From Pelomyxa schiedti (lineage: Eukaryota; Protista; Evosea): a stretch of 38,708 bases of DNA. The stretch lies in NCBI GenBank assembly GCA_020536535.1, contig JAHLWZ010000955.1, forward strand, positions 1-38,708, in the 5' to 3' direction. The notes beneath the pieces are model-generated. The model worked only from the letters and a program-made list of their open reading frames with translations. It ran no database searches and was not told the DNA's origin. Each line of letters opens with the position of its first letter. Position 1 is the stretch's first letter. A program made the translations under genes and the position numbers. Of this stretch, positions 1 through 36,691 are shown in pieces.

Positions 1-116
1 TTTGTTTGTTTGTTTGTTTGTTTGTTTGTTTTTTTTTTTTTTTTTTTGTTTGTTTGTTTGTTTGTTTGTTTGTTTGTTTGTTTGTTTGTTTGTTTGTTTG
101 TTTGTTTGTTTGTTTG
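1..116. repeat. (TTTG)n microsatellite with an internal poly-T run, most likely intronic in the LRR gene
   Basis: Directly visible tandem TTTG units from base 1 to 116, followed by an AG acceptor at 151-152. Confidence 0.95.
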
Positions 117-152
117 CCCCCATCACCTTGTGGTTGTGCGACTCAAAATAAG

Positions 153-2201
153 GGACCTTGAAGAGACTGACATGGTTGGCACTATTCCTACTACGGTGGG
201 CTACTTGCAGAATGCTTCATACATGTAGTTTCGTTGTGCAATTATCCCTCGTTTACCTTCCTATTTCAGATATTTGAACACCAACAAGTTGACTTCAACC
301 ATACCCTCCGAACTTGGGAACTCGTTCAGCCTCACCCACTTGTACCTTCCCCACTCCCTATTAAACATATTCTGGGAGCATGGTGATTAAGCATCAGTGT
401 GGTAGGGGACTGTCTAATAATCTTCTGAGTGGTACAATACCCAGTGTACTAGGCAATCTGATCCACCTCTCAGAATTGTACAACTCCCTTATTTTTTTTT
501 TTACTCCTCTCAAGCAACCAAAAGGAGCCTAAATTCAAATATCTTGTCAGGAACTATCCCCTCCTCCCTGAGTAAACTTACATTTGTACAAACCTTGTAA
601 GCATCTCATCCAATATCTCTCCATTTATTGATTCGTTATCCAAGCGCTTTAGATTCAAACAAGCTACAAGGCACATTGCCTGAAATGCCGGATTCTAATT
701 GGCTCATTTCTTAGTAGTTATTACTTCGTGGTTTTTTTTTTCTGACAAGAAAATTAGTGAGGTTGCAAACAACCAACTAACAGGTCCTTTGCCCAATTTT
801 TTATCCAGCCTGACATACCTGGTGTCTGTGTGTGTATTCTGTTTAATTATTCAGGGACTAAGTTCTTTTAAGCGCTGTGCAGTATAACAATTTAACTGGG
901 ACCTTCCCACAAGAGTTGTGCCAATCCTTGAGGCTTCAGGCTTTGTACTTCCCCTACACAAGCTTTTTTTATTTGCTTATTTTTTCCTTAAAAAAGAGTC
1001 CTATCCAGTAATTCATTTTATGGCTCAATACCCGAATGCATTGGCGCAATGGCCAATCTGAGAACTTTGTTTGTGACCCTACTACCTTGATAAATCTAAC
1101 CTGTTAACAGGACCCTCAGCACAAATTATTTTGATGGTTCACTTCCTAGCACTAGCTGGCTCTACCACACTTCGATACTTGTCTGCTTTGCCTTCTTTTT
1201 TCTCCAAACCCTTATTGCCCTTAATTTCAAGGTATCTTGATCACAACAACTTAGTCGGTAGTATTCCAGATTCATTTGGAAATTTTCCAGCTGTTGAGCA
1301 AATGTATTCACTCTGTAAATCGCTCTTCTAAATAGGAACTTTACTTATCACATAGAAATCTGAGTAACAACCAACTCAGTGGCACAATACCATCCCAGTT
1401 AGCGGCGTTACCTCATATCTACGTCCTGTAAACGTCTTCCGATTTGCAATTTATTGACCCTGACGTTAAGAGATTTATCAGAAAATGATTTGTCTGGGTC
1501 TCTTCCAACCGAATTGATGGCCCTGTCATTACTTTCCGAGCTGTGTGTTGCTTTTGGTAGCCTATGAGTCAACTTATGAAATCCCACAGCTATCTTAATG
1601 GAAACCAACTTTCTGGGGAGCTCCCCGTTGATTTGCCTTACCGGGCGGTGTATTTGTATTCCTCTCATCCCGCCATTTCCACTAATAAACTTGCATAGAG
1701 ATCTCTCAGAGAACCTGTTTACTGGCTCTCTCCCAGCATCTTTATCAACTTGCAGTACCCTACTTGAACTGTAATGTCGGTTAGAATTCCGAGTTACCTC
1801 ATTTTCAACGCAGGGATCTGCATGGCAATGAGTTTACCGGCACTATTCCCTCTATCACTACACTTTATCTCGCAACATTGTACGTCTCCAATAATAACCC
1901 TTCTATCGAAACTGATCAGTGGAAAGAGACCTCAGTGATAACTACTTTGTGGGCCCACACCCTAACATAACTACTTTCAGTTCCTACTTCGACTGGTGTG
2001 TGTCTCAGTCGGGTATTCAAAATCAAGATTCTCACGTTTCTTTGCAGCAACCTTGCTAATAATTGCATTGACTGTGATGAAAACAACACCTGCAACTGCT
2101 GTGCTCAACGGAGTGACTGCACCTCATCCTCTCTTGCCCTTCCCCTCCTTCCCTCTCTTTGGCTCACTTTCGTTTTTACATTCCTCATTTCCAGAATGTG
2201 A
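153..2201 (+). CDS. Extracellular plant-type leucine-rich repeat protein, probably GPI-anchored (5' part lies outside the window)
   Basis: 16 LRR exons (153-224, 270-341, 406-477, 525-596, 645-713, 758-829, 873-944, 997-1068, 1111-1180, 1232-1303, 1356-1427, 1471-1542, 1590-1649, 1699-1770, 1814-1879, 1927-1995), each encoding LxxNxLxGxIPxxLxxLxxL. The last exon, 2048-2201, has a Cys-rich cap (NCIDCDENNTCNCC) and a hydrophobic tail ending at TGA. All introns are GT-AG. Confidence 0.92.
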
Positions 2202-2318
2202 GTGACACTAAACCCCACAACCTCCTTGTAACACAATACAATCCATCCCCAAGACGGGAGGAACACCCTATTCATCACCATTCTTTATTCTTCTTTTCAC
2301 AATTGTTACAAAAGGGTG

Positions 2319-5300
2319 TCACACAAGAAGCTCCTTAGATATCACAGTGGGAGGGGGTTTGAGGCCAGCAGTCCATGAGGACAGAGCCCCTAAAGCGGCG
2401 CTAGCCCACGACTCCACAGAATCGTCGTGGGTGTTGACAACTGGTGGAACAACGTCGGGTATTTGTGGGTATGCAGAGGGTGTTGTCGACGAGGTGGAAT
2501 TCCATTTGGATACTTCTTGGGAGGTGCTCTGAATTTCACGCTCTAGGTTGTGCTGGGCCTTGTTGAGGGCTCTCTCGATGGCTCGTTGTTGATGTTGCAG
2601 GTCCTTTTCCATCTGCCTCTGGTAGTTCTCAAATTCTTTTTGCCGGGACGCGAATTCCGCGTTCCACGATTCCAGTGGCGCGGTATCGACGGTTTCCCAA
2701 TTGCTTGTATCTTCTACCTGCATTTTGTGTGCTCTGGGCGGTAGTCTTGGGGCTTGTTTATTTGGGTGGCTTGTGAGATATAGAGAAGATTTGGTTAGGA
2801 ATGTACCTTCTGGCGTTATAAACAGGCGTTTTTGTTGGTATGCTATTTCGGCTGCTTCTTCGGCACTTTTTGCTTCCTTGAATGCTTTTGCTCTGGTGGC
2901 GTGTTTAGAGGAACCAACATGCTTCTGCCAAAGGGTTTCAGGAATTTCAGTATGGCAAGGTTCACACATCAACTGTGAGATAGAATTGGAATGCAACAAA
3001 AAAAGAATTGTAATAGATACTTTCTTCTCGCGCTTGGCAGTAACTCGCTTGTCAAGTGCTTGTGGGCGTTGTGGTAAAAGACGTCGTGAAGTGGAAACAA
3101 CTCCATTTGTGCCAAAAAGCATCTCTCTCTCCCTGGATGGAGTGTTTACTACTAAAAATGGAATGATGTTATCAAACCAGTTTGCTCTTCTATCGCGAAG
3201 TACTAAGCGAACATGCATCAAAATCCAGCCAATAAGAAAGAAAACTGGTGAAACACACAAATGAATTGCAATGAGGATGTTATTTGTCGGGTCATCAATA
3301 ACAGTTACGGCAATGGCAAAGGCATTGGTCCAGAAGACTACACAGAATAATCCCACCCTTATCTGATTTATTCTGCAAGTGGGTTAGAAAAAGCAAAAGA
3401 ATATTGGGATAAACGTTTTATTCCAGTAAGGAGGGTAAACGAGTAAACTAATTGCACTAAATCCCGACATGACAGTTAGGCATGCAGCGAGAGGAATCAA
3501 AAGCTTAGTTTGTCCCTCAAGCATAACAGTTATGGCGGTACTGAGAAAGCTAATGACAAGTAGGGGTCTGTTAAATTTTTGACTCTGACGTGAAAAAACC
3601 TAGTCAAGAATAAGGCGGATTACGTTAAGCTGTGCAGTGATGTGTACATTTGTGTACGTCACATCCGGCTTATCTTGCGACCAGTCTTTCCATAAATATA
3701 CAGCAACACGGTCCAGACCGCCGTCAACATATGACATACGAAGGGCTGACAAAAAATATGGTAGAATCGTAAGACAGGATAGTGCAAATAATGCACTGTG
3801 AATTGATCCCCAACAATCCATGTCAGGGTAGCCTGTAACTCCATCACTGCCATTATTATCCTCCATGTTATCAGAGTAGCAATGAAATACTTCGATAAGA
3901 CTTCGGCAAGCAGGGATAAAGCAAACTGGAATAAATTAGTGGAGACTTCACATTTTCGGGAGAACTTGTTGACATCAGCCAGCATATCATTTTATAGAAG
4001 GGCCAAACATTGTGAATTTTTGAATCCTCTGGAGCACCCACTATTTTGTAGGAACTCAGTAGAAGAAATACAAAAAGCCATGCAAAGCCTGCCGATAACC
4101 CATATTGAGCATAGTATTGTGTTGTATCAGAGAAGGGTAAGAAGTCCCAATTAAACTGATGAGAGTTGTTAAAGAATGAATTCAAAAAGGAAGGAAACCT
4201 GAAAGGGGCTCAAAATTTTTCTAGCAGGGTGCTTTGTAGGCCACGGAATACCGCAACTGAAAGAGAAAGCAGCCAGTTGCAAGAATTCCACAATCAATAC
4301 AACAAGACCAACGAAAAAGTCAAACCATGGGGATAACTCATGGTAAAGCCTTGTTGTAGTGCCACCATAAACCTGAAAACGGTGAGTTCGAGCTTAAATT
4401 TGTAGAATTACTCTTAGTAGTTTTCCGTCTTTGAGACGCCATCGTCGAACAGTTCTATCTCTACCACCAGAAAAAACGGAAACGTCGTCCACTGTCATTC
4501 TTCAAACACAGTGAACCAATTGAGAAGAAAGGAGGAGAAACCTGTTTATGTGATCAGTGTGGCCATCATACGCCCACAGTTGCTTTCCAGAATCAGCTTC
4601 ATAGCATCTAACAACCTACAAAACAAGTTGTAAATAAGTTTGAGGATGTACAACTACCTTATCCTTTCCAGCACTAGCAATATAATTATCAACAGCAGCA
4701 CAAGCTCGGACAGTGCTGAGGGAGCTCCTATACACTCGCACTAAAGAGCCAGTATCAACAGCATACCTCCCTACAGTTTTATCTCGAGATCCTGTACTCA
4801 TCTTCTGAATAAAGAAAGCCACATGTAAGAAGAGTTTACCAGTGTAGACAGAGGAACCAAAGGTTGTCATCATGTTAATTGCATTATCATGGGGAGGTAA
4901 CGTATATAAAGCTGTGAGTCTCAAACCATCCCAGACTCGTAAGTTTCCTGAGGCATCCCCAGAAACAACGAAGGATTGACCTGCCTTGTACACTGAAACT
5001 ACAGCGTTGATAGGGCTCATATGGCCATACAAGGTGCAAATAGGCTCTGTTTTTCCAAAGTGCCAAACCTACATAGGGGTGACTAAAGATAGGCCTTCCT
5101 ACAAACAAAAGACCATAAGAGCACCGTCAGCTGATCCTGACCATATGGTGTCTGACAATTCGACAGCAGTGAGGCAATTGATATAGTCAGAGGCCCCTTT
5201 GTGGGTTACAGGAGACTGTGAAGAGAGAAGAGGCCATTCATAGACATCTTTTCCTGCCCCACTGATAACGCAAAACTCTGTCAATATTTAGCTTTGAAAG

Positions 5301-8300
5301 GTTTTTTGGCCAAAATTCGGTATACCGCAAAGCTTCATACAGTTAACAATGTCCTCGTGAGGAAAGTCTTGAATAAATTGACCAGTTCGTGTATCCCAAA
5401 CTTTGACTGTCTGCATTTTCGTAAATAACTATTTTCTGCTTGTTCTCTTACTTTATCAATACTTGCGGAATACAGTCTTGCTTTCGTTGCAGCAAGTTGG
5501 GTGACCTAAAGTTTGAAATTTGAGCCTAACTTATGGTTAAAAAAAAAATATACCTGATCTTTGTGTCCAGAAAAGAGCCTAGAACAAACCCCGGAATCGA
5601 TATACCACTGCCTAATGACTGTATCCCTTCCCGCGGAATATAGAAATGGCTCACAAACACAAATTGCCCAAATCTTAAATTTGAGTTAAAAAATGTTGTG
5701 CTTTTTCCAAGGAAGAGGTTCACCGTATCTGTATGCTGTACAGGAGTGACGTCAATTTTCATAAGTGGGAAGCAGCAGCAACAACATAATCTCGCAGTCT
5801 TGCGTTTCTACACAAGGATTAGTCTGGTAAGGAAGGAGACAGGTACTTGAGATTCACGAGATGCCCTCAGAGGACTCAATACGTCAGTTGGGATAGAGTT
5901 TGAACTCATGCTTATCTCATAGAACCAGGCATTGTGAAGTTGTGCAAAGGCGGTTGCCTCTTCCTTCGAAACTTCACGTTTGCCCTCTTGGTCGGCATTG
6001 CTTCCAATAAAAATTAAAAGCGGTTGCTGACCTGCAGTATTTAGTTGATCAAATTGTTGGTTGTTCAATCTGTGCCTTTCTTTGGAAGATTTTTATATAA
6101 GGTAAGCATATAGTCAGGAAGGATAGCGAAAGATCTTCGAGATACAATACTGAAAACAACAAAAATAGCGTCTATGTGTGATAAAAGCTTGGCTGCATTT
6201 TCATCTAACTAAAATTGTGATTAAGTGTGCTGGAAATTGGATGGTGTACAAAATCTTTGCCACCAGGGGTATCTGTGATCCTACCCCCATTGGATGTCAT
6301 GAAAGTTTGAGCTGAGAGAAAGATGAACATCAAGTAAGAGCTTACTATAAAACACGAACCTTGCAAGGTTTTTGTATAATCATTTGTAAATCCCTTTTGC
6401 TGATATAGATTCACAAAGCAGCTTAGGTCTTATGGTCAGAAAAGAGGAGGGTGAGGAAAGGCTAACGTTTTTCCAACTCCACATGGGCCAATAACCAGAA
6501 CATTATCAGATAACTTGATGGATATCAGAGAATAATTTCCTAGGGCCAACCTTTTTGTATTCATCTCCTCGTGGAACCAATCTCACAAAACCGCCTGCGT
6601 AAGAATTTGGATTTTTCTTTTGTATCTAAATCGAAATCAGATAAATTTTAAAACGTCAATAAGCATAGTATACTTTTATCTGGACTTGACCACGTTGTTG
6701 CTTGAGTACCAACTCTGCTACAGCAAGAAACATTTCTTCTACGTTGAGGGCCGTCTTAGCTGAGGTCTTTTTAAAATCACGATTAAAAATGAGGGGAGTA
6801 ATGAAAAGTTAACCTCAAAAAACGGTAGTTTTTGAGACCGGGCAGAATCGGATCCCTCTTGAGTTGCTACCTTTCTTTGAGTAAATCTAAGGTGAAAGGA
6901 GAGGGCAAACTTTGCGGGAGCTCTCCAAGTCACATTTATTTCCAACAATGACACCAGGAACCCAATCTAAATAACGTCATGCTTTGTGAGGCCATAATAT
7001 TTTACCTGAGTCCTTAACTCTCTTGACTTGCTCCAAGAAGTTAGAAAGCTCATCATATGAATTTCTTGATGTCACATCGTAGACAAAGATAAAACCTTGG
7101 CCGGTTCTCATATACTGGTCTCTCATCGCTGACTTTAAGTAACAGTTACGGAAGTATTAATGTTCCGGAATCATACATATTCCTAGTATAAAAAAGATGG
7201 AGAGGGAAGCTTGTGAGATTTGGGGCAAAAAGAGAAGAGTACTTCTTGTCCAGCAGTATCTATTGTGAATAGGTTAAAGTTGAGCAGGGGGAATAAATCA
7301 TACCAAGGATATCTAAGGTTATGGTTTGCCCGTTAAGTGAAATCTGTTTTCTCTTTGAAGTTTAAGAGACCAATTTGACACTGATGGTATTACTTACATA
7401 AGAGTCCTCTTAGGGTGAATTAATTGAAGAGTTTGTTTCTTTATCAATTTTGAGAGAGGGAAGGAAACAAACCGATTGTTGGATCATACCTTTAAGAGTA
7501 AGTGCGACAGGAAATGATTTTGAATAACATACTCATTGATGAAGTGCTTTTGTATAAATTGAATTGTCAGTGCTCTTTTTTTTTTTTTTTTTTTTTTTGA
7601 AAAAGGAAATTAGAAAGAGAGAGTGGCAGCAGATGAATACGATTTTCCCACGCCTCCTCCACCAACAATGACAAGTTTAACTTCGGTTTGTGCACCACTC
7701 GTGTAATATGAGTTTACTTGTTGCGATGGCTGATCAGAGTCACAGCAGCAACAACAACAACAGCAACAACAACAGCCATTACTGTCTTTATGTGTAGCTA
7801 CTTTCTTTGGCACTTATTAAACATAATGGAGACAAGAAAGAAAATAACTGGAACATAGCCAGTGTGTAGCATCAACAAGGCTTTTCCAATATCAACTAGG
7901 CACTCACTGACACCCTTTTCTGAGAAAGTGGAAATTTCTCGGAATGGAAGATTTTTACGAGCAGCAAGTAATTGGAAATCAAAAGGACTAATCTGTTTCC
8001 TTTTAAGAGATCACCCTAAAAGTTACACATACCATGCGCTCAGACTCATCCAAGTCCGATTTTGTTCCCACAAGGTAACGCACATATTTGCCTGTAATAT
8101 TGATGTGTTACAAATTGTTGTTGGAAAAACTTCACAACCTCCTTGTATATAATCCACATGCTCAACAATGGAACATATTTCATCCAAGTCATCAGAATTA
8201 TCAAGAGCGGCAACAAAAATTACAGCATCAGCATTGCAGAGGACTTCATCCTGCTTTCGTGTCTTGTTTGCATTATTACCAGGAAGAAGGGAACTAGAGT

Positions 8301-8578
8301 GTACTTGGTGAGGACTACAATCACAAAAATCAAAATTCACTGTTCTGCCATCAATTTCAGTAGTAGCAGTCTAATGTAAAAGTTAAGTGAAGTGGTGGAG
8401 GAAAAAAAACCATACGTAGTGACCTGTACCTGGAAAGAGTTTGAGCCACGAATAAAAAGGGAGGAAAAAAAACTCTACCACGGGAGTACAACTGTGGGAG
8501 GTCTTTGTGCATAAAATAATAACAAAGTGTTGATTTGCCACAGCCACTTGGACCAATAACTGCCACAGTGCACTCCAT
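2319..8578 (-). CDS. Multidomain protein: 3 Ras-like GTPase domains + 8 WD40 repeats + ~8 TM helices + C2H2 zinc finger (~38 introns)
   Basis: Manual splicing gives a continuous frame from ATG 8578 ([16 protein letters not shown]) to TGA 2319 (KELLV*). Inter-domain junctions are in frame: QVQIK|IQKKNP...YKK|[16 protein letters not shown]; RESQ|[27 protein letters not shown]|IWAICV; GKLLR|VYGG...[14 protein letters not shown]. Confidence 0.8.
2901..2966 (-). other. Matrin/U1-type C2H2 zinc finger of the multidomain gene
   Basis: [22 protein letters not shown] = C-x2-C-x11-H-x5-H. Confidence 0.7.
3200..4330 (-). other. Multi-pass membrane domain (~8 TM) of the multidomain gene, resembling the N-terminal TM region of protist TmcB/TmcC-like proteins
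   Basis: Eight hydrophobic segments; motifs [32 protein letters not shown] and [15 protein letters not shown]. The family resemblance is from memory. Confidence 0.65.
4412..5740 (-). other. WD40 beta-propeller (8 repeats) of the multidomain gene
   Basis: Repeats include [62 protein letters not shown] and [21 protein letters not shown]. Confidence 0.92.
5847..6512 (-). other. Degenerate Ras-like domain 3 of the multidomain gene
   Basis: G1 GPCGVGKT; G2-like YTKT; G3 DTPG; G4 degenerate SNAD; then [18 protein letters not shown]. Confidence 0.8.
6674..7690 (-). other. Canonical Ras domain 2 of the multidomain gene
   Basis: Spliced sequence [71 protein letters not shown] matches the Ras subfamily consensus, including the effector loop. 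Confidence 0.95.
7742..7774 (-). repeat. Coding (TGY)11 repeat: poly-cysteine linker between Ras domains 1 and 2
   Basis: Mixed TGT/TGC codons in frame with the downstream [13 protein letters not shown]. Confidence 0.8.
7860..8578 (-). other. Degenerate Ras-like domain 1 of the multidomain gene
   Basis: G1 GPSGCGKS; G3 degenerate (DCSP instead of DxxG); G4 TKSD; G5-like EIST. Confidence 0.75.
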
Positions 8579-29873: not shown

Positions 29874-32012
29874 ATGCCTCAGGGCACACACATCGAGCGC
29901 GTCGTTATCGCACCTCTTGTAGCTCTATCTCTGCTCATCACTGTGGCATGGGGCAACAGCCTCACACAGGGATATGACAACAGCCGAAACGTGAAGGCAG
30001 CCCCCGTGGTGGGTGCGCCGACGTCGTACACTACGTATTTGTGCGGGGGAGTGCCTGTGGATTCTGACAACGTGGCGTCCTGCACCCAGACCGTGACTAC
30101 AGTTACCACCAAGGCTATTGGTGTTATTGGATCCATGAATCAGTTGGTACAGACTGATGACAGGGACGACTACGCCTACCGCCCTGGGTATGGTTTTTTT
30201 TTTTTTTTCTGTCGCCTCCTTTTTTTTTTTTTGAATAACTGTTCGTCAGGTACTATATTGACTCTACAGGTGGTGTGCAGGATTACTCTGTTTTTGACGT
30301 TGATGATATTGGCACAACATTCAAGATGCACTCGGAGTTTAGTGGATTTAACTCTATCATGCTGAACTCTGTTACATCATACACCATTGAGGACTCAGTG
30401 ATAGAGGATGTGACGGATGCTGATGGCAAAGACACCTGCGATTTCTCGGGGCTGGGAGCTGCCGTTGCAGTGTTTGGGGGAACCAAGCTCACCATCTTCA
30501 ACACGACTATCTATGTACAAGGTGTCTCCAAACTAGGCGTAATGGTTGATTCAGCCTGTGAAGTGACAATCGAGTCCAGCAAGGTCACCAGCTATGGCGG
30601 AACCCTCTACAGCGATTACCAAAATATGGCTTGGCCCGCGTACATGGTATCTCCACCGTGGGTCCTAGGTAATGCGCTTTTCCCTTAAAATCGTCTGACA
30701 TTGATTCCCAAGGAATCATGGGAACCAGCAGATGCACAAGCTTGTACGGAAACTATGCCACAATGCATGTCATCGACTCTGACATGGCTGCCGCACAGTG
30801 GGCCGTTTTGTCCACAGATTCTTGTTCGAAGCCAATGCTGAATGTCGTAAACAGCAAGATTTCTCACTTGGGAGCCGACTACCCACTCCAACAACCGAAT
30901 TCAGATGGAACCGTTCTTTATCAAACTCCAAATCCTTACACAAATCGATCTGGCTATGGTACATACATCATTGGAGACGCTAAGATGTACTGGTATGGTG
31001 TAACTGCGGACGTTGGCACTTATATGGGTATTTTTACTGGCGGAACATCCACCTGGACGAGTTTGACTGCGGGAGAAACTTACACTCTGTATGATGCTTA
31101 CGGTTCTGCATCAAGAACGTACACTGCTACGGAATCCAAAGTCACCACCATTAACTCTGATACATTCGGCTTCATGGCGCACCAAGGCAGCAGCAACACT
31201 GCAGTGATTGAGAAAGGAACAGTTGTTAACTCCGGGTGGACAGGAATTTTGGTGAAGACTGGATGCTCAGCATCCTTCTCGGTAACCTCTGGTTCGGTTA
31301 TCACACCTGGAAACGGCATTCTGTTACAGGTCAGTAAACAAATAAACTATTCTGGAAATGAATCTCACTACTGACAGGTACTGGATAACGATGATACCAC
31401 TACTGGAGTTGCAGACCCATCCACTACGACGTTCAACACTAATCATACAGAGGCGGCCGGTTGGCCAACGGCAACATCCACCGGTTCCAGCAACACAGTG
31501 TCACTCACCCTCGATGATGTAACCCTCAGCGGCGATATTTACAACGGCGCAGGGTATTACGGGCAACAAGCACCCACACTCAAGGTAACACTTAGCACCG
31601 GGGCAACATTGAATGCAGCCATCGCCGCTACTGCAACAATTCATGTTACTTATGAAGGAAACGTAGCAATCTCCCAAGCTAAAGTGTGTACTCTTTCTAA
31701 ATTGCTGAAGGAAGCTATTTTCACCACCGGATATAGGTGAAAGCAAGTGAGGATTGGCTTGCTTATCAGAATACTTTCTTCACAATCAGTGAGTACTTTG
31801 ACCTCGGCCAGGTTGCCAACAAGTTGTACTACAATACACACAACAAAGTAGCTGTCACAGTGAACTCGGGCTGCACGTGGGTGGTAACGGCTGAGAGCCT
31901 GCTCACGTCACTCACAAACAAAGGAACTATCTACGGAACCATTACCACCAACAGTGATGGCACCATCTCTGTTGTTCCAAGTTCGACAGTCATGGCCAGA
32001 GGGTCATGGTAA
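29874..32012 (+). CDS. Secreted beta-helix protein of a bacterial-type family
   Basis: Signal peptide; motifs DFSGLGAAV, PPWVLGIMGTSRCT, WAVLSTD, SGYGTYIIG, ILLQVLDNDD, LSGDIYNG, WVVTAESLLTSLT; 4 introns. Confidence 0.7.
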
Positions 32013-32070
32013 TTTATTGACAAAAAAAAGAAGGAAATAAAAAAAAAAAGAGAAACCCAACTTTTTGTTT

Positions 32071-35000
32071 TTAGGTGAGAACAGCAGAAAAAGCGGGGTG
32101 GGCGTCCAGCTTGGTTGTTACCATGAAAGGAATTGTTGAGGGATTATCAAAGGGGAAGATGGACCTGAGCACGCGGTTTGATGGGAAATGACCTTGATAG
32201 GGCTGGCACAGCTCTGTTTGGGGTATTAGAGTGAATTGAATTTGATTTTTGGTAAATAGAAGAAGATTGGTATTGGAAGGGAGGGGACCATATTTAGAGA
32301 GCTGCAATTCCTTTCGCGTTGTCTTAGTGGCAGTTTTCTTGGATGTAACTACAACATTGTCGAGGTTTTCATGCCACTCACCTGTGTTTAGTTGGAATTG
32401 ACTCTGTAGGTTGTTATATGAGTAGAAGAAAAACCTTTTTCCAGCATGGACATGTAATCGGATATTCCCGTGTGTTTCACCTTCAACTGCAATGATATAT
32501 CGTTGTCTTCCAAGGGGACAAGGAAGTCGTCGGAAGTGAATGTCTAAAATAACCAAAAAGTAAAACAAGGAACGCACATGAATGGACTTAGACTTACCCT
32601 TTTCAAGTAGTGTTTAGCAAGAGCCTCCCAGTCATTTACTGGGATGTTAAGAGATTTCCAGTACAACTCGGGGGAAGTAAAGAAAACGTACAGGTGTGCA
32701 GGAACAAATTCACTGAGGAATCTCTGTGAAAGACCATTAGTTTTAGTGCTTGTTAGTAGCCGAACTTACAGCAGAAATTGCAATAGTTTGTTGTAAATCT
32801 GCCTTGGAGAGTTTAATTTTATCCAAATCTCGTCCGATTACAGGGAGAGCGGTAATCCTAGCCTTGACTAACTTTTCAAGTGCTTCTGTATGATGATTGA
32901 CGTTCTCGGCGACTTGGCGCCAGGGCGGGTGTTGCTGATTCATAGATAAACCATAAGGGACAATAACGCTATTCATGAACTGCTCCAAAACGCGCGTCGG
33001 TTCTCTAGGTAGAGGTTAAACAACCCCTTAATAGTAGGAACCTTATGCGATCAGTCCAGAATTTTTTAAACATAGTAAGTTCCTCCAGTTCCATCGTGAG
33101 GTGTAGTGCAAGTAAAGCATTTTGAGGGGATATCTTCGACTGAAGTGAGAAGAGAAAACAACCTTCAAGGAAACCTGGAAGAATAGTGTGGATGAAAGTC
33201 CCTGTAGAAAAGTTGGTTGCAAGTTAAGAATACGGATAACTACCGGGCCAGCAATCCTGCGTGCAATGAAGGTATCTGCAGCTGGAACTCGGGCAACACA
33301 GCCAATTACTGTGTGAAACATGATGAAGTCGTAAAGGCTATGCATTTTTAGGCACAGTACAGCCCACATCATGATTAATATCGAGAGGGGTGGATGCACC
33401 AGGAACGCCATGAAAAAGGCTAGAAGTAACTGCCCCAACCCAGTAACAAGTATTGCCCAGAAAAATCGAAATATAGGAACCGCCTGTGTATCAAGCCTAC
33501 AAGGTCATTACTTTGGCACTCCTGGAGAACGCATACGGAGATAAGAAGTCATAGATAAACATTTCAAAAAAGTAAACAGTCAAAACTGCAAAGGGCACGT
33601 AGACCAAAGCAGTGATGACAAGTAAAAGGGAGAAAAGAATGTTCATAAGTGTGAGAATTGGCTGGAAAGGAACCAGTATTAATGTTCCCAAGAAACCCTA
33701 CTCCAACTTTAGTTTGGGAATCGCCAAGTAAATACTTACCTTGAAAACATAATTTATTATGACATTGAAAAAGCGGGAAACATTTTTCCCAAGGAGTCCA
33801 TAGTCAGGTGCACTTTCGAACCTGTGTCTTGAGGTTGCCACCTGGATGCTATTGAGAAAACTGCATGATAGAGACGACAGTAACATGGTTCCATATCGAC
33901 GCTATCCTAGTCACATAGGTGGATCCACGATCGGAAACTTCTACTTTGCCAGTATGAGAATTAAATTCTATAAACAATTAATGAAAAAAAGAAATGGAAA
34001 GGAACAGACGAAAATGTGAGGGAAATTCGGAGGTTCTAAATTGAGCTTGAATCCCCAAAGGTCCTCTCCATAAGTTTACAACCAAAAAGCCATAATATGT
34101 GTTGGCAATCCAACAGCAAATTCTTCTCCAAAAGCATACGAGACGCCACCCTGGGTACGTCGTTCGAACTTTAGATGTGCGCCATGTCTCACAGGTGAAG
34201 TACCCATTCTGGCCCTATACATACAGATATAAGTAGTACACATAAAAGTAGCTGCCAATACTTCTTTAATTTTCCAGTTGCGTGGACACCATATCTTTGA
34301 GCGGAAGGTGGCTTTTGAACGTGCCTTCCTCAGAGTCCGAAGTTGTAACTCCAGTTTTGGTTGAATTTCTTTATAAAACTGGGCCTCCCGTTCCATGAGC
34401 CATATCTGTAGTGGACATTTTACGGAATCGTGTCGAAGTTGATCGAGAATTGTGTTGAAGTCATCATCCCTTTTCATATTTAGAAGACCTGGCGCTAATT
34501 GTAAAGACCTACATATGTTCCTTGTCGTATCTATTCATTGCTTTGTTTATTTGATCGTTTCTCCAATCAGTAATTCTTGACTTTATGCTATGAGCTGCAA
34601 TCATCTTGGAAAGTGTCTCCGCGCGAAATGCTTCCCGTTGTTCCTGCATGGATTGAGGATTAAAATAAGGCCAAGATAAAGCACACTTCAAATATAGCAC
34701 TCTGTGTGTAAATTTTAAGAGCACACTGGAAATGGCTGAGTAAGATAGGAACGATATTTGGGAACTATCATTGGTGAACTGGGGAATGGTACAGGAAAAA
34801 ACAACATGAGAATGAATAACATCTGATGCTTCAACTATGTTAGATAGTAATCGGCGGTTAAACTCCTGACAAAGAAGGATTAGTCCTTTTTATAGCTCCT
34901 TAGAATGCTTACAACGGCATATTTATCAGCCAATAAATCTGGAGTAAGGGATGCCAGAGACATTGGGTCAGTTTGTTGGAGGTGCTTGTAAAACTCATGC

Positions 35001-36691
35001 TGTTCAGTGCACCACTGGTCCTCAGTCCGTTTCAGAATATCTTCAAGCATCTTCCAGAAGGCAGCAACATTTTCTTCACTTTTTTGGTTGCTTCCGGTAT
35101 GCTTGATATGCATCAAATCGTAGAGACGCAAGTCCAGTTGTTCACTTTAAAGTGTTAGAGGAACTGGGGGAATTCGGCTACCTATCGTGGTGAAGGACAA
35201 GTGGCTCCCCCTTCTTAGGTAAAGGAAGGTATTCTTTCAAAACCCAGCGTTTCCGATAGGATGAGATGATCGATCCATGTGAGAATTTCTACATGTCAAT
35301 TGGAAGAAACCCATGAAGTGGGAAGAGGAACTACTTACTGAGAAGACTTTCTTCATAGTCCTTACACCAATAAAAATATCTAGAAGCCACTTGATCCCCC
35401 AGAACAAACTATAAAGCGTCAACAGTAGAAAATTGGCTAATTTGGGAAAACTTACTGCAAAAATCCCTGTTTTACACTGACATACCGACCAATAAATCGA
35501 TTTGGGAAAGATATAATAAATTGTGAAAGTGCCACTGCTGCATAGCCCACAAAGCTGTCCCAAATGCGCTCCGTACCCGTTTGGAGAACAGATGAGAGGT
35601 GCCACACATGCTCCTGACCTTCGAAGTTCACACTTTGAACAGAAAACTCTCCCCTCTTTCGAATCTGTCGCCTTTGTTCCAGGGAAAGCTGCATTTTATT
35701 AACTAAAGTCTCATATGTTTGAGGGAAAAACCTTTTTCCGTTTGCCACCAGCTGTGGCTATGCTCAACAAGTCATCTTGCTCAGGTTTATGAACCAATTC
35801 CTCACCAGCAGCAAATACAGAGCCAAATGACATATGGGAAATGATGGACTCTGGTTTAGATTCAGCAGCTGATTCAAGGACAGGATTCTCTGACGAACCC
35901 TCAGCCCTATGCTTGGAGCTTTTTTTGTCGTGATCAGATGACACAGGGATCAACGGCTCAGGCTCTATTTCATCCACTTTCACTATCCCAGCTCCGCTCT
36001 CAGAAGACTTTGTAGTCGTAGAAGTAGTAGTTGTCGTGGTGGTCGTAGTTGTAGCAGTTGCAGTAGCAGTAGCAGTAACGTTTGCAGCACTACTATCAGC
36101 CTCAGTTGCTATCGCCGACGTCATAACCGGCTCCGGGTCAGTTTTAGCTGCAGCCAGTACCAAATTCCTAGCTGCAGTATCGTCAGTGTCCTTGCACGCC
36201 GCTGTGCCATCAGCCGCGATCGACGACGACGAAGCCGAGGTCGAGGTGCTGTTATACGTCGGTGTCTGGGCTTTTTTCATCCTGCCGCTACCAGGACTCA
36301 ACAAGCTCGCGGTCTCGTCGACGTCTTCGTCGCCCGCCCCGTCGTCTGACGACGACGAAGATGACTCGTCGTCGCTACCTCCCTTGCGGGCCTTGCGCTT
36401 AGCGGGACCCCCTGGCTTCGTGTGTTCTTTGTTCCCCGTTGTTGTTGTTGGAGTGTTGCGGACTACCACGGGATGGGGCGAAGTCGACAGGAAGGCGGAA
36501 GGGGGCAGCGTGAGGGGAAATGTATTCCATACGAAGACTTCTTCTTCTAGGGCGCTGCCGACCGCCTCGAACAAGTCTCGGTGACGACCGTCGAGGTTCT
36601 TGGGCTTCTTCTTGGGACGAAGGGGTACTCTTGCTGTTGTGGGAGCTGTTGCTTCCGCGCTCTCTTTCGCCTTACTGGCGCTCGTTGTCAT
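32071..36691 (-). CDS. Large uncharacterised multi-pass membrane protein with low-complexity N-terminal region
   Basis: Long first exon (VFVWNTFPLTLP followed by Ser/Thr/Ala-rich sequence), then many short exons with TM segments and the motifs RHRFESAPDYGLLGK and PAADTFIARRIAGP. Function not recognised. Confidence 0.7.

What the first reader, a model, noticed from the sequence alone, without database searches (positions are those of the whole stretch)
2319..8578. Single-polypeptide signalling machine: triple Ras + WD40 propeller + 8-TM domain + zinc finger
Seen: with about 38 short introns removed, one frame runs from ATG 8578 to TGA 2319. There is no stop or intergenic gap between the Ras1, Ras2, Ras3, WD40, TM and ZnF parts. 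Topology is self-consistent: the GTPases and propeller are cytosolic, the C..CW loop after TM3 is external, and an even TM count returns the ZnF to the cytosol. Known: multi-GTPase polypeptides exist (Miro, EngA/Der, GIMAP8), but I know none that joins a canonical Ras to a WD40 propeller and a polytopic membrane domain. Inference: this may be a membrane sensor with a built-in GTPase switch and a G-beta-like scaffold, analogous to a fused receptor plus G protein.
Basis: partly seen in the sequence, partly recalled or inferred. Interest (0 to 1): 0.92.

Follow-up and report, generated by a model that had tools for sequence, protein, structure and literature searches.

The report
Multi-GTPase, WD40, eight-helix membrane protein
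This amoeba gene is an unusual member of an ancient, apparently undescribed eukaryotic protein family that joins a small GTPase switch (normally Rac, here Ras flanked by two decayed GTPase domains) to a WD40 propeller and an eight-helix membrane domain that loosely resembles fungal putative calcium-channel proteins.

Summary
The gene is real. In Pelomyxa schiedti, 40 exons and 39 short introns give one 1,491-aa frame, and the window reproduces the deposited model KAH3743898.1 ('Rac1 protein') exactly. It is not unique. The core, Rac–WD40–8TM–C2H2 finger, recurs in two Pelomyxa paralogues, Mastigamoeba, Capsaspora, Salpingoeca and Diphylleia, partly as transcript-derived or uninterrupted ORFs. 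Foraminifera carry versions with 2–4 G domains, some including a canonical Ras; these probably arose independently (p-AU 0.034). Only the middle G domain here is an intact Ras; the outer two are degenerate. The propeller is eight-bladed (Fbw7-like), not G-beta. The membrane domain is not GPCR-like and has no Pfam or PDB match; its nearest named predicted fold is PF06011 (fungal Flc/Pkd2/spray, TM-score 0.58). Most likely it is a membrane-tethered GTPase switch that uses ordinary GEFs, GAPs and effectors, with its output changed from Rac to Ras in this copy. No RNA contig crosses an inter-domain splice, and the G1–G2 joint is the weakest. I found no paper describing the family, and the scan had not found it on other DNA.

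The parts
2319..8578 (-). Whole gene, 40 exons and 39 introns, 1,491 aa (deposited as KAH3743898.1 'Rac1 protein', Pelomyxa schiedti)
7858..8578 (-). G1: degenerate Ras-superfamily G domain (aa 1-166). P-loop intact; switch II reads DCSPHQ in place of DTAGQE; G4 reads TKSD. Closest to G2 and shares its intron positions. Probable pseudo-GTPase.
7805..7848 (-). G1-G2 joining intron of the deposited model (44 nt). Weakest junction: low splice-site score and several in-frame alternatives; retention gives a stop at about 7800.
7742..7774 (-). Run of 11 Cys after G1: an expanded form of the Cys cluster that follows G domains across the family; candidate palmitoylation site (inferred)
6704..7687 (-). 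G2: canonical Ras domain (aa 209-372) with all G boxes and the Ras effector loop, no CaaX; 65% identical to stand-alone Pelomyxa Ras
   Evidence: five of its introns supported by an RNA contig
6511..6703 (-). Basic linker G2-G3 with two introns (6673-6626, 6550-6514) with strong donor sites; an in-frame ATG at 6564 could start a shorter gene
5859..6510 (-). G3: degenerate G domain (aa 409-566) in the position of the family's Rac. P-loop, Thr35 and DxxG kept; Gln61 and the NKxD lysine lost.
5769..5807 (-). Polybasic + Cys5 linker, homologous in place and make-up to the post-Rac linker of the paralogues
4361..5738 (-). Eight WD40 repeats (aa 594-918), predicted eight-bladed propeller running straight into TM1
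3204..4345 (-). Eight-helix membrane domain (aa 924-1246). Conserved Cys pair in the TM3-TM4 loop and a conserved cytosolic R...W..D.PD...H..S loop. No Pfam or PDB match; nearest named predicted fold PF06011.
   Evidence: two introns RNA-confirmed
2901..2966 (-). C2H2 zinc finger (C-x2-C-x12-H-x5-H), conserved across most of the family; only weak, sub-threshold likeness to zf-met/JAZ/UBZ fingers
2499..2663 (-). Predicted coiled-coil tail (from sequence pattern only), followed by a low-complexity end
   Evidence: sequence; weak Pfam coiled-coil hits

Best explanation
One polypeptide of an ancient eukaryotic family whose fixed core is an eight-bladed WD40 propeller sitting directly on an eight-helix membrane domain of PF06011-like fold, followed by a zinc finger, and whose N-terminal cytosolic module is a small GTPase. 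Shown: the architecture, its conservation, and intact Rac switch regions in the family. Inferred mechanism: the membrane domain and palmitoylatable Cys clusters replace the CaaX anchor and fix the switch to one membrane site. The GTPase is cycled by the cell's ordinary GEFs and GAPs and signals to ordinary effectors. The propeller holds the adjacent G domain and recruits partners, coupling the switch to whatever the membrane domain does (by fold analogy, stretch- or lipid-dependent Ca2+ or solute flux). In this Pelomyxa copy a canonical Ras was added upstream and took over the switching. The propeller-adjacent domain (G3) and G1 decayed into pseudo-GTPase scaffolds, so the output changed from Rac-type to Ras-type effectors.
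For: Core conserved in two paralogues with shared introns at domain joints. Also in Mastigamoeba, Capsaspora, Salpingoeca and Diphylleia, including transcript-derived proteins and uninterrupted ORFs on single contigs. Family Rac switch I/II is 10-13/13 and 16-19/19 identical to stand-alone Rac, as expected if it binds common partners rather than only an internal one. G2 has no CaaX, unlike most of the stand-alone Pelomyxa Ras genes read. The active GTPase is exchangeable (Rac in most members; Ras here and in Bolivina; both in Nonionella), while all four multi-G proteins keep a decayed G domain next to the propeller. TM model pLDDT 90 with eight long helices; Atlas TM-score 0.58 over 255 residues to the PF06011 spray/Flc/Pkd2 cluster. 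S. pombe Pkd2 passes Ca2+ on membrane stretch in vitro (PMC9727806).
Against: No functional data exist for any member. The PF06011 link is model-to-model, moderate (TM-score 0.58, rmsd 4.4; feature score 0.88, a lead only) and has no sequence-level support. A shared fold does not show channel activity. No model of GTPase-propeller contacts was obtained (single-sequence model pLDDT 40). No RNA contig crosses an inter-domain splice. G3's origin is unresolved: sequence leans to Rac (48 vs 38-42 bits), intron positions lean to G2.
Confidence: 0.5

Rival explanations
1. The GTPase is the input, not the output: its nucleotide state gates a channel or transporter formed by the eight-helix domain through the propeller (FeoB-like logic in a eukaryote). 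Adding Ras puts the pore under Ras-GEF control.
For: Fold kinship to PF06011 proteins reported to carry Ca2+. The propeller runs into TM1 without a linker, and a G domain is always kept next to it. Conserved switch regions fit regulation by common GEFs just as well.
Against: No pore or transport evidence; no match to any solved channel or transporter. The active GTPase can sit one domain away from the propeller and can be swapped, which is awkward for tight allosteric gating.
Confidence: 0.25
2. One reading: a receptor fused to its own G protein. The membrane domain senses an outside ligand and activates the GTPase in cis through a G-beta-like propeller.
For: All parts lie on one chain. An outer loop has a conserved Cys pair and, in this copy, an N-glycosylation sequon.
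Against: Not a GPCR fold; eight-bladed Fbw7-like propeller rather than G-beta; very small outer loops and no ectodomain; switch regions show no sign of co-evolving with a private activator; no GEF-like domain.
Confidence: 0.13
3. The N-terminal part is a gene-model fusion: G1 and/or G2 are separate neighbouring genes, and the real family member starts at G3 (ATG 6564) or at G2.
For: No RNA contig across the joints; an unspliced contig covers 7613-7845. The G1-G2 splice scores are low and ambiguous, and 33 in-frame splice paths exist between G2 and G3, so an open path alone is cheap. In-frame ATG at 6564.
Against: G2 has no own in-frame ATG and no CaaX. The G2-G3 donors score above the gene's mean (7.7 and 8.0 against 4.9). 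Only about 90 nt would separate the genes, against about 185-210 nt seen upstream of this gene and of paralogue C853. The transcript-assisted deposited model joins all parts. A family-type Cys cluster lies in frame between G1 and G2. Transcriptome-derived foraminiferan proteins have the same collinear layout. The unspliced contig also retains an undoubted Ras intron, so it is DNA or pre-mRNA.
Confidence: 0.12

Closest known systems
Miro and RhoBTB (multidomain Ras-superfamily GTPases; from my own knowledge)
   Same: G domain(s) built into a larger chain without CaaX. Miro has two G domains, one divergent, and a membrane anchor.
   Different: Miro has EF hands and one tail helix; RhoBTB has BTB domains and no TM. 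Neither has a WD40 propeller or a polytopic domain, and their switch regions are divergent, whereas here they are canonical Rac or Ras.
Roco proteins (LRRK2, Dictyostelium Roco; from my own knowledge)
   Same: A G domain and a WD40 propeller in one chain
   Different: No COR, kinase or LRR domain here. G2 and the family Rac score far higher on Ras (PF00071) than on Roc (PF08477). Rocos are soluble.
PF06011 'TRP-like' proteins: S. pombe Pkd2/Trp663/Trp1322, yeast Flc, Aspergillus TrpR, Neurospora spray
   Same: Nearest named predicted fold for the membrane domain (TM-score 0.58, 255 residues; feature score 0.88)
   Different: Those have an outer lipid-binding Ig-like domain and nine helices (bioRxiv 2022.08.11.503631). 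Here there are eight helices with a cytosolic N-terminus carrying GTPase and propeller, and no Pfam sequence match.
Heterotrimeric G protein + GPCR
   Same: Membrane protein, GTPase and WD40 propeller act in one unit
   Different: Eight helices of non-GPCR fold, an eight-bladed propeller and a small GTPase rather than G-alpha, all on one chain
FeoB (bacterial G domain fused to a polytopic transporter; from my own knowledge)
   Same: GTPase covalently joined to a polytopic membrane domain
   Different: Different GTPase class, unrelated membrane fold (no hit), no propeller
Unnamed database relatives: KAH3745933.1, KAH3758879.1 (P. schiedti), m51a1_g9363 (Mastigamoeba), XP_004346649.1 (Capsaspora), EukProt Salpingoeca kvevrii, Diphylleia, Nonionella, Bolivina
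   Same: Same WD40-8TM core, most with the same zinc finger
   Different: Most have one intact Rac; foraminiferan ones have 2-4 G domains and no finger; this copy has decayed-Ras-decayed. All are annotated only as 'Rac1 protein' or not at all.

Membership tests
Ras subfamily GTPase (G2) | Intact G1-G5 boxes and Ras effector loop | tested here: met
   247 bits on Ras profile against 77 on Rac; 65% identity to stand-alone Pelomyxa Ras
Ras subfamily GTPase (G2) | C-terminal CaaX box | tested here: not met
   No CaaX after G2 whether the next intron is spliced or kept; most stand-alone Pelomyxa Ras genes read have one
Active small GTPase (G1, G3) | DxxGQ switch II and NKxD | tested here: not met
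   G1 lacks Gly60/Gln61; G3 lacks Gln61 and the NKxD lysine. Nucleotide binding itself was not testable.
Rho/Rac family (family's usual G domain) | Rac switch I and II sequence | tested here: met
   10-13/13 and 16-19/19 identical to stand-alone Rac in ten relatives
Rho/Rac family (family's usual G domain) | Rho insert helix and CaaX (PMC7600811) | tested here: not met
   insert absent in the four family Rac domains aligned (both Pelomyxa paralogues, Diphylleia, Capsaspora); no terminal CaaX
G-beta | Seven-bladed propeller matching the G-beta model | tested here: not met
   Eight repeats; best PDB matches eight-bladed; PF25391 at 56 bits against cut-off 150 in the paralogue
GPCR | Seven-helix GPCR fold | tested here: not met
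   Eight helices; Foldseek TM-scores about 0.14-0.16 to A2A and Smoothened; no whole-domain match by VIA-align
PF06011 TRP-like (Flc/Pkd2) | Sequence match to PF06011 | tested here: not met
   0 of 38 TM domains at E<=0.05
PF06011 TRP-like (Flc/Pkd2) | Shared membrane fold | tested here: inconclusive
   Atlas TM-score 0.58 by query, rmsd 4.4, predicted against predicted; features 0.88
PF06011 TRP-like (Flc/Pkd2) | Outer N-terminal lipid-binding (TRP_N) domain | tested here: not met
   WD40 propeller precedes TM1 directly; no TRP_N among the Pfam hits shown
PF06011 TRP-like (Flc/Pkd2) | Ca2+ permeation or stretch activation | not testable with these tools
   needs reconstitution
Roco | Roc-COR tandem | tested here: not met
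   No COR hit among Pfam domains shown for the window protein or relatives
U1/matrin/JAZ or UBZ zinc finger | Pfam/PDB match above threshold | tested here: inconclusive
   Only weak hits: zf-met E 0.095, AKAP95 E 0.003, RAD18 UBZ E 0.014

The most novel reading that the evidence does not exclude
An ancestral eukaryotic, single-chain mechano- or lipid-sensing device: a Pkd2/Flc-like membrane domain is allosterically coupled through an eight-bladed propeller to a built-in Rac switch, linking membrane tension or Ca2+ flux directly to actin control. It was kept in amoebae, choanoflagellates, filastereans, CRuMs and foraminifera, is not seen in animals, fungi or plants in these searches, and was re-wired to Ras at least twice by GTPase-domain swapping.
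Probability: 0.25. Interest if true: 0.92.

Novelty: new variant of a known kind. Interest (0 to 1): 0.72.

Why it matters
Rac and Ras are textbook lipid-anchored monomers. A family in which an unmodified Rac or Ras switch is covalently built onto a polytopic membrane protein, conserved in Amoebozoa, Holozoa (including a choanoflagellate and Capsaspora), CRuMs and Rhizaria, would have been part of the early eukaryotic signalling toolkit. It has gone unnoticed because databases call it 'Rac1 protein'. It offers a way to test what the poorly understood PF06011-like membrane fold does, since it comes with a built-in biochemical read-out (GTP loading). Capsaspora is a transfectable host for that test (own knowledge). 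The repeated Rac-to-Ras exchange, with decay of the propeller-adjacent domain, is a natural experiment in re-wiring signalling output.

Tried and rejected
Exons and natural open frames were searched by reference, and the joined step was left out. The deposited protein (P0165) came back from a search with another query; it was used only by id in local scripts, one cluster look-up and one pairwise comparison. Folding and fold searches used the paralogue P0001. Led nowhere: single-sequence fold of the whole paralogue (pLDDT 40); Pfam on TM exons and on 38 TM domains; PDB by sequence and by fold; PF06011 scan of the genome (control did not ring, uninformative); contig look-up of the Diphylleia protein. 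Paper searches by architecture, organism and accession found no description. A Rho-evolution review has no mention of WD40 or Capsaspora, and a second item sought by a PubMed id from memory is not held; paywalled literature was not covered. Trees could not place G1 or G3 (branches about 5), and the Ras-only tree cannot tell whether G2 and the foraminiferan Ras share an origin (p-AU 0.5).

Full report
Source. The window is contig C955 of a 52,367,397-base assembly in 5,337 pieces. These figures match the Pelomyxa schiedti single-cell genome (52.4 Mb, 5,337 scaffolds; 1.59% GC-AG introns; genes predicted with Augustus and improved with PASA/EVM using transcript data; PMC8887013).

Observation. 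From three-frame translations I built a model of 40 exons and 39 introns of 37-66 nt that reads without a stop from ATG 8578 to TGA 2319 (1,485 aa). A search with a foraminiferan Ras domain as query returned a 1,491-aa protein from a 38,708-base contig, KAH3743898.1 'Rac1 protein'. It differs from my model only in one acceptor and one donor, and the window reproduces it exactly with introns 8304-8263 and 7848-7805. This model is not independent of the DNA, but it was made with transcript help. One single-cell RNA run has seven contigs on the gene. They confirm five introns directly and two more by length sum, show one Ras intron retained, and cross none of the inter-domain joints. A splice matrix trained on the gene's other introns rates the G2-G3 donors high (7.7 and 8.0; leave-one-out mean 4.9) and the G1-G2 joint low and ambiguous.

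The core is a family. Single TM exons found two more loci in the genome. Both encode one canonical Rac, a basic Cys-rich linker, WD40 repeats, the same membrane domain and the same zinc finger. They share intron positions with the window gene at the linker-WD40 and WD40-TM joints. A profile of that exon region found 35 representatives among 1.8 billion proteins, and a family alignment found full-length members: Mastigamoeba m51a1_g9363, Capsaspora XP_004346649.1, Salpingoeca kvevrii, Diphylleia rotans and metagenomic proteins. A TM-domain fragment comes from Syssomonas. The Diphylleia and Salpingoeca proteins come from transcript assemblies, and three others are uninterrupted ORFs on single contigs. 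The Rac-WD40-TM fusion therefore does not depend on splice guesses.

Multi-GTPase versions exist elsewhere. Nonionella stella has a 1,820-aa protein with decayed G, Rac, canonical Ras, decayed G, WD40 and TM, and a second with Rac plus decayed G. Bolivina argentea has Ras plus decayed G. The first aligns collinearly with the window protein. On a WD40+TM tree the window gene sits with archamoebae (97/98), and a clade of window plus foraminifera is rejected at p-AU 0.034. The Ras-only tree is uninformative. Independent recruitment of Ras is therefore favoured (my estimate about 75%) but not proven; a short likeness in the post-Ras linker keeps shared ancestry open.

The three G domains. G2 is a canonical Ras (247 against 77 bits on Ras and Rac profiles), 65% identical to stand-alone Pelomyxa Ras, most of which end in CaaX while G2 does not. 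G1 keeps the P-loop but lacks the switch-II Gly and Gln. It is closest to G2 and shares intron positions with it. G3 keeps the P-loop, Thr35 and DxxG but lacks Gln61 and the NKxD lysine. G3 sits where the family's Rac sits, is followed by the family's basic Cys linker and leans to Rac by sequence (48 against 38-42 bits). Its intron positions, however, resemble those of G2, so its origin is unresolved. The family's Rac domains keep switch I and II almost unchanged but lack the Rho insert.

Mechanism. Shown: the parts, their order and their conservation. Inferred: the unchanged switch regions, the missing CaaX and the exchangeability of the active GTPase argue for a switch tethered to a specific membrane site and served by common GEFs, GAPs and effectors. 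The constant presence of a G domain next to the propeller, which has decayed in all four proteins that have another GTPase upstream, argues for a structural docking role there. In this copy the output would be Ras-type. I put this at 0.5. Gating of a pore by the GTPase (0.25), a cis-activated receptor-GTPase (0.13) and a gene-model fusion of the N-terminal domains (0.12) remain. That the whole is one polypeptide I put at about 0.85-0.9.

Novelty. The parts are known kinds, and multidomain small GTPases are a known kind (Miro, RhoBTB, Roco; FeoB in bacteria; own knowledge). I found no paper on this combination or its accessions, with the limit that subscription journals were not searched. Earlier scan notes on this same stretch agree on pseudo-GTPases and Cys tails; no note on other DNA describes the family. 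Verdict: real, an apparently undescribed ancient family, with this gene as a Ras-swapped variant. Interest 0.72.

Noticed in passing
window 1-2205 (+): Leucine-rich-repeat gene with roughly one repeat per exon, converging tail-to-tail with this gene (about 113 nt between stops)
   Followed up: no
window 8788-about 10000 (-): Upstream gene(s) with an F-box-like motif and Cys-rich zinc-finger-like C-terminus, ending 210 nt before ATG 8578
   Followed up: no
window 7133-7176: This intron, next to a 6-nt micro-exon (7177-7182), is retained in the RNA contig in which five upstream introns are spliced
   Followed up: partly
L008/L009 (G000:C853 43801-48132) and L010/L011 (G000:C731 about 30982-35480): Single-Rac paralogues; their Rac domains lack the Rho insert helix, as do the Diphylleia and Capsaspora domains aligned
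   Followed up: yes
G000:C731 37439-38714: Rab-like small GTPase exons just downstream of the paralogue, apparently separate genes
   Followed up: no
L013, L014, L015: Three stand-alone Ras genes on different contigs with identical G-domain protein sequence and the same four intron positions
   Followed up: no
window 6550-6700 vs P0047 (Nonionella): The basic linker after the Ras domain shows a short likeness between the Pelomyxa and foraminiferan proteins, although the WD40+TM tree separates them
   Followed up: partly
P0029 and Atlas clusters: The eight-helix domain seems to occur in other eukaryotic proteins without GTPase or WD40 (oomycete, Preaxostyla and other unnamed clusters): an unnamed, wider membrane-domain family
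   Followed up: partly
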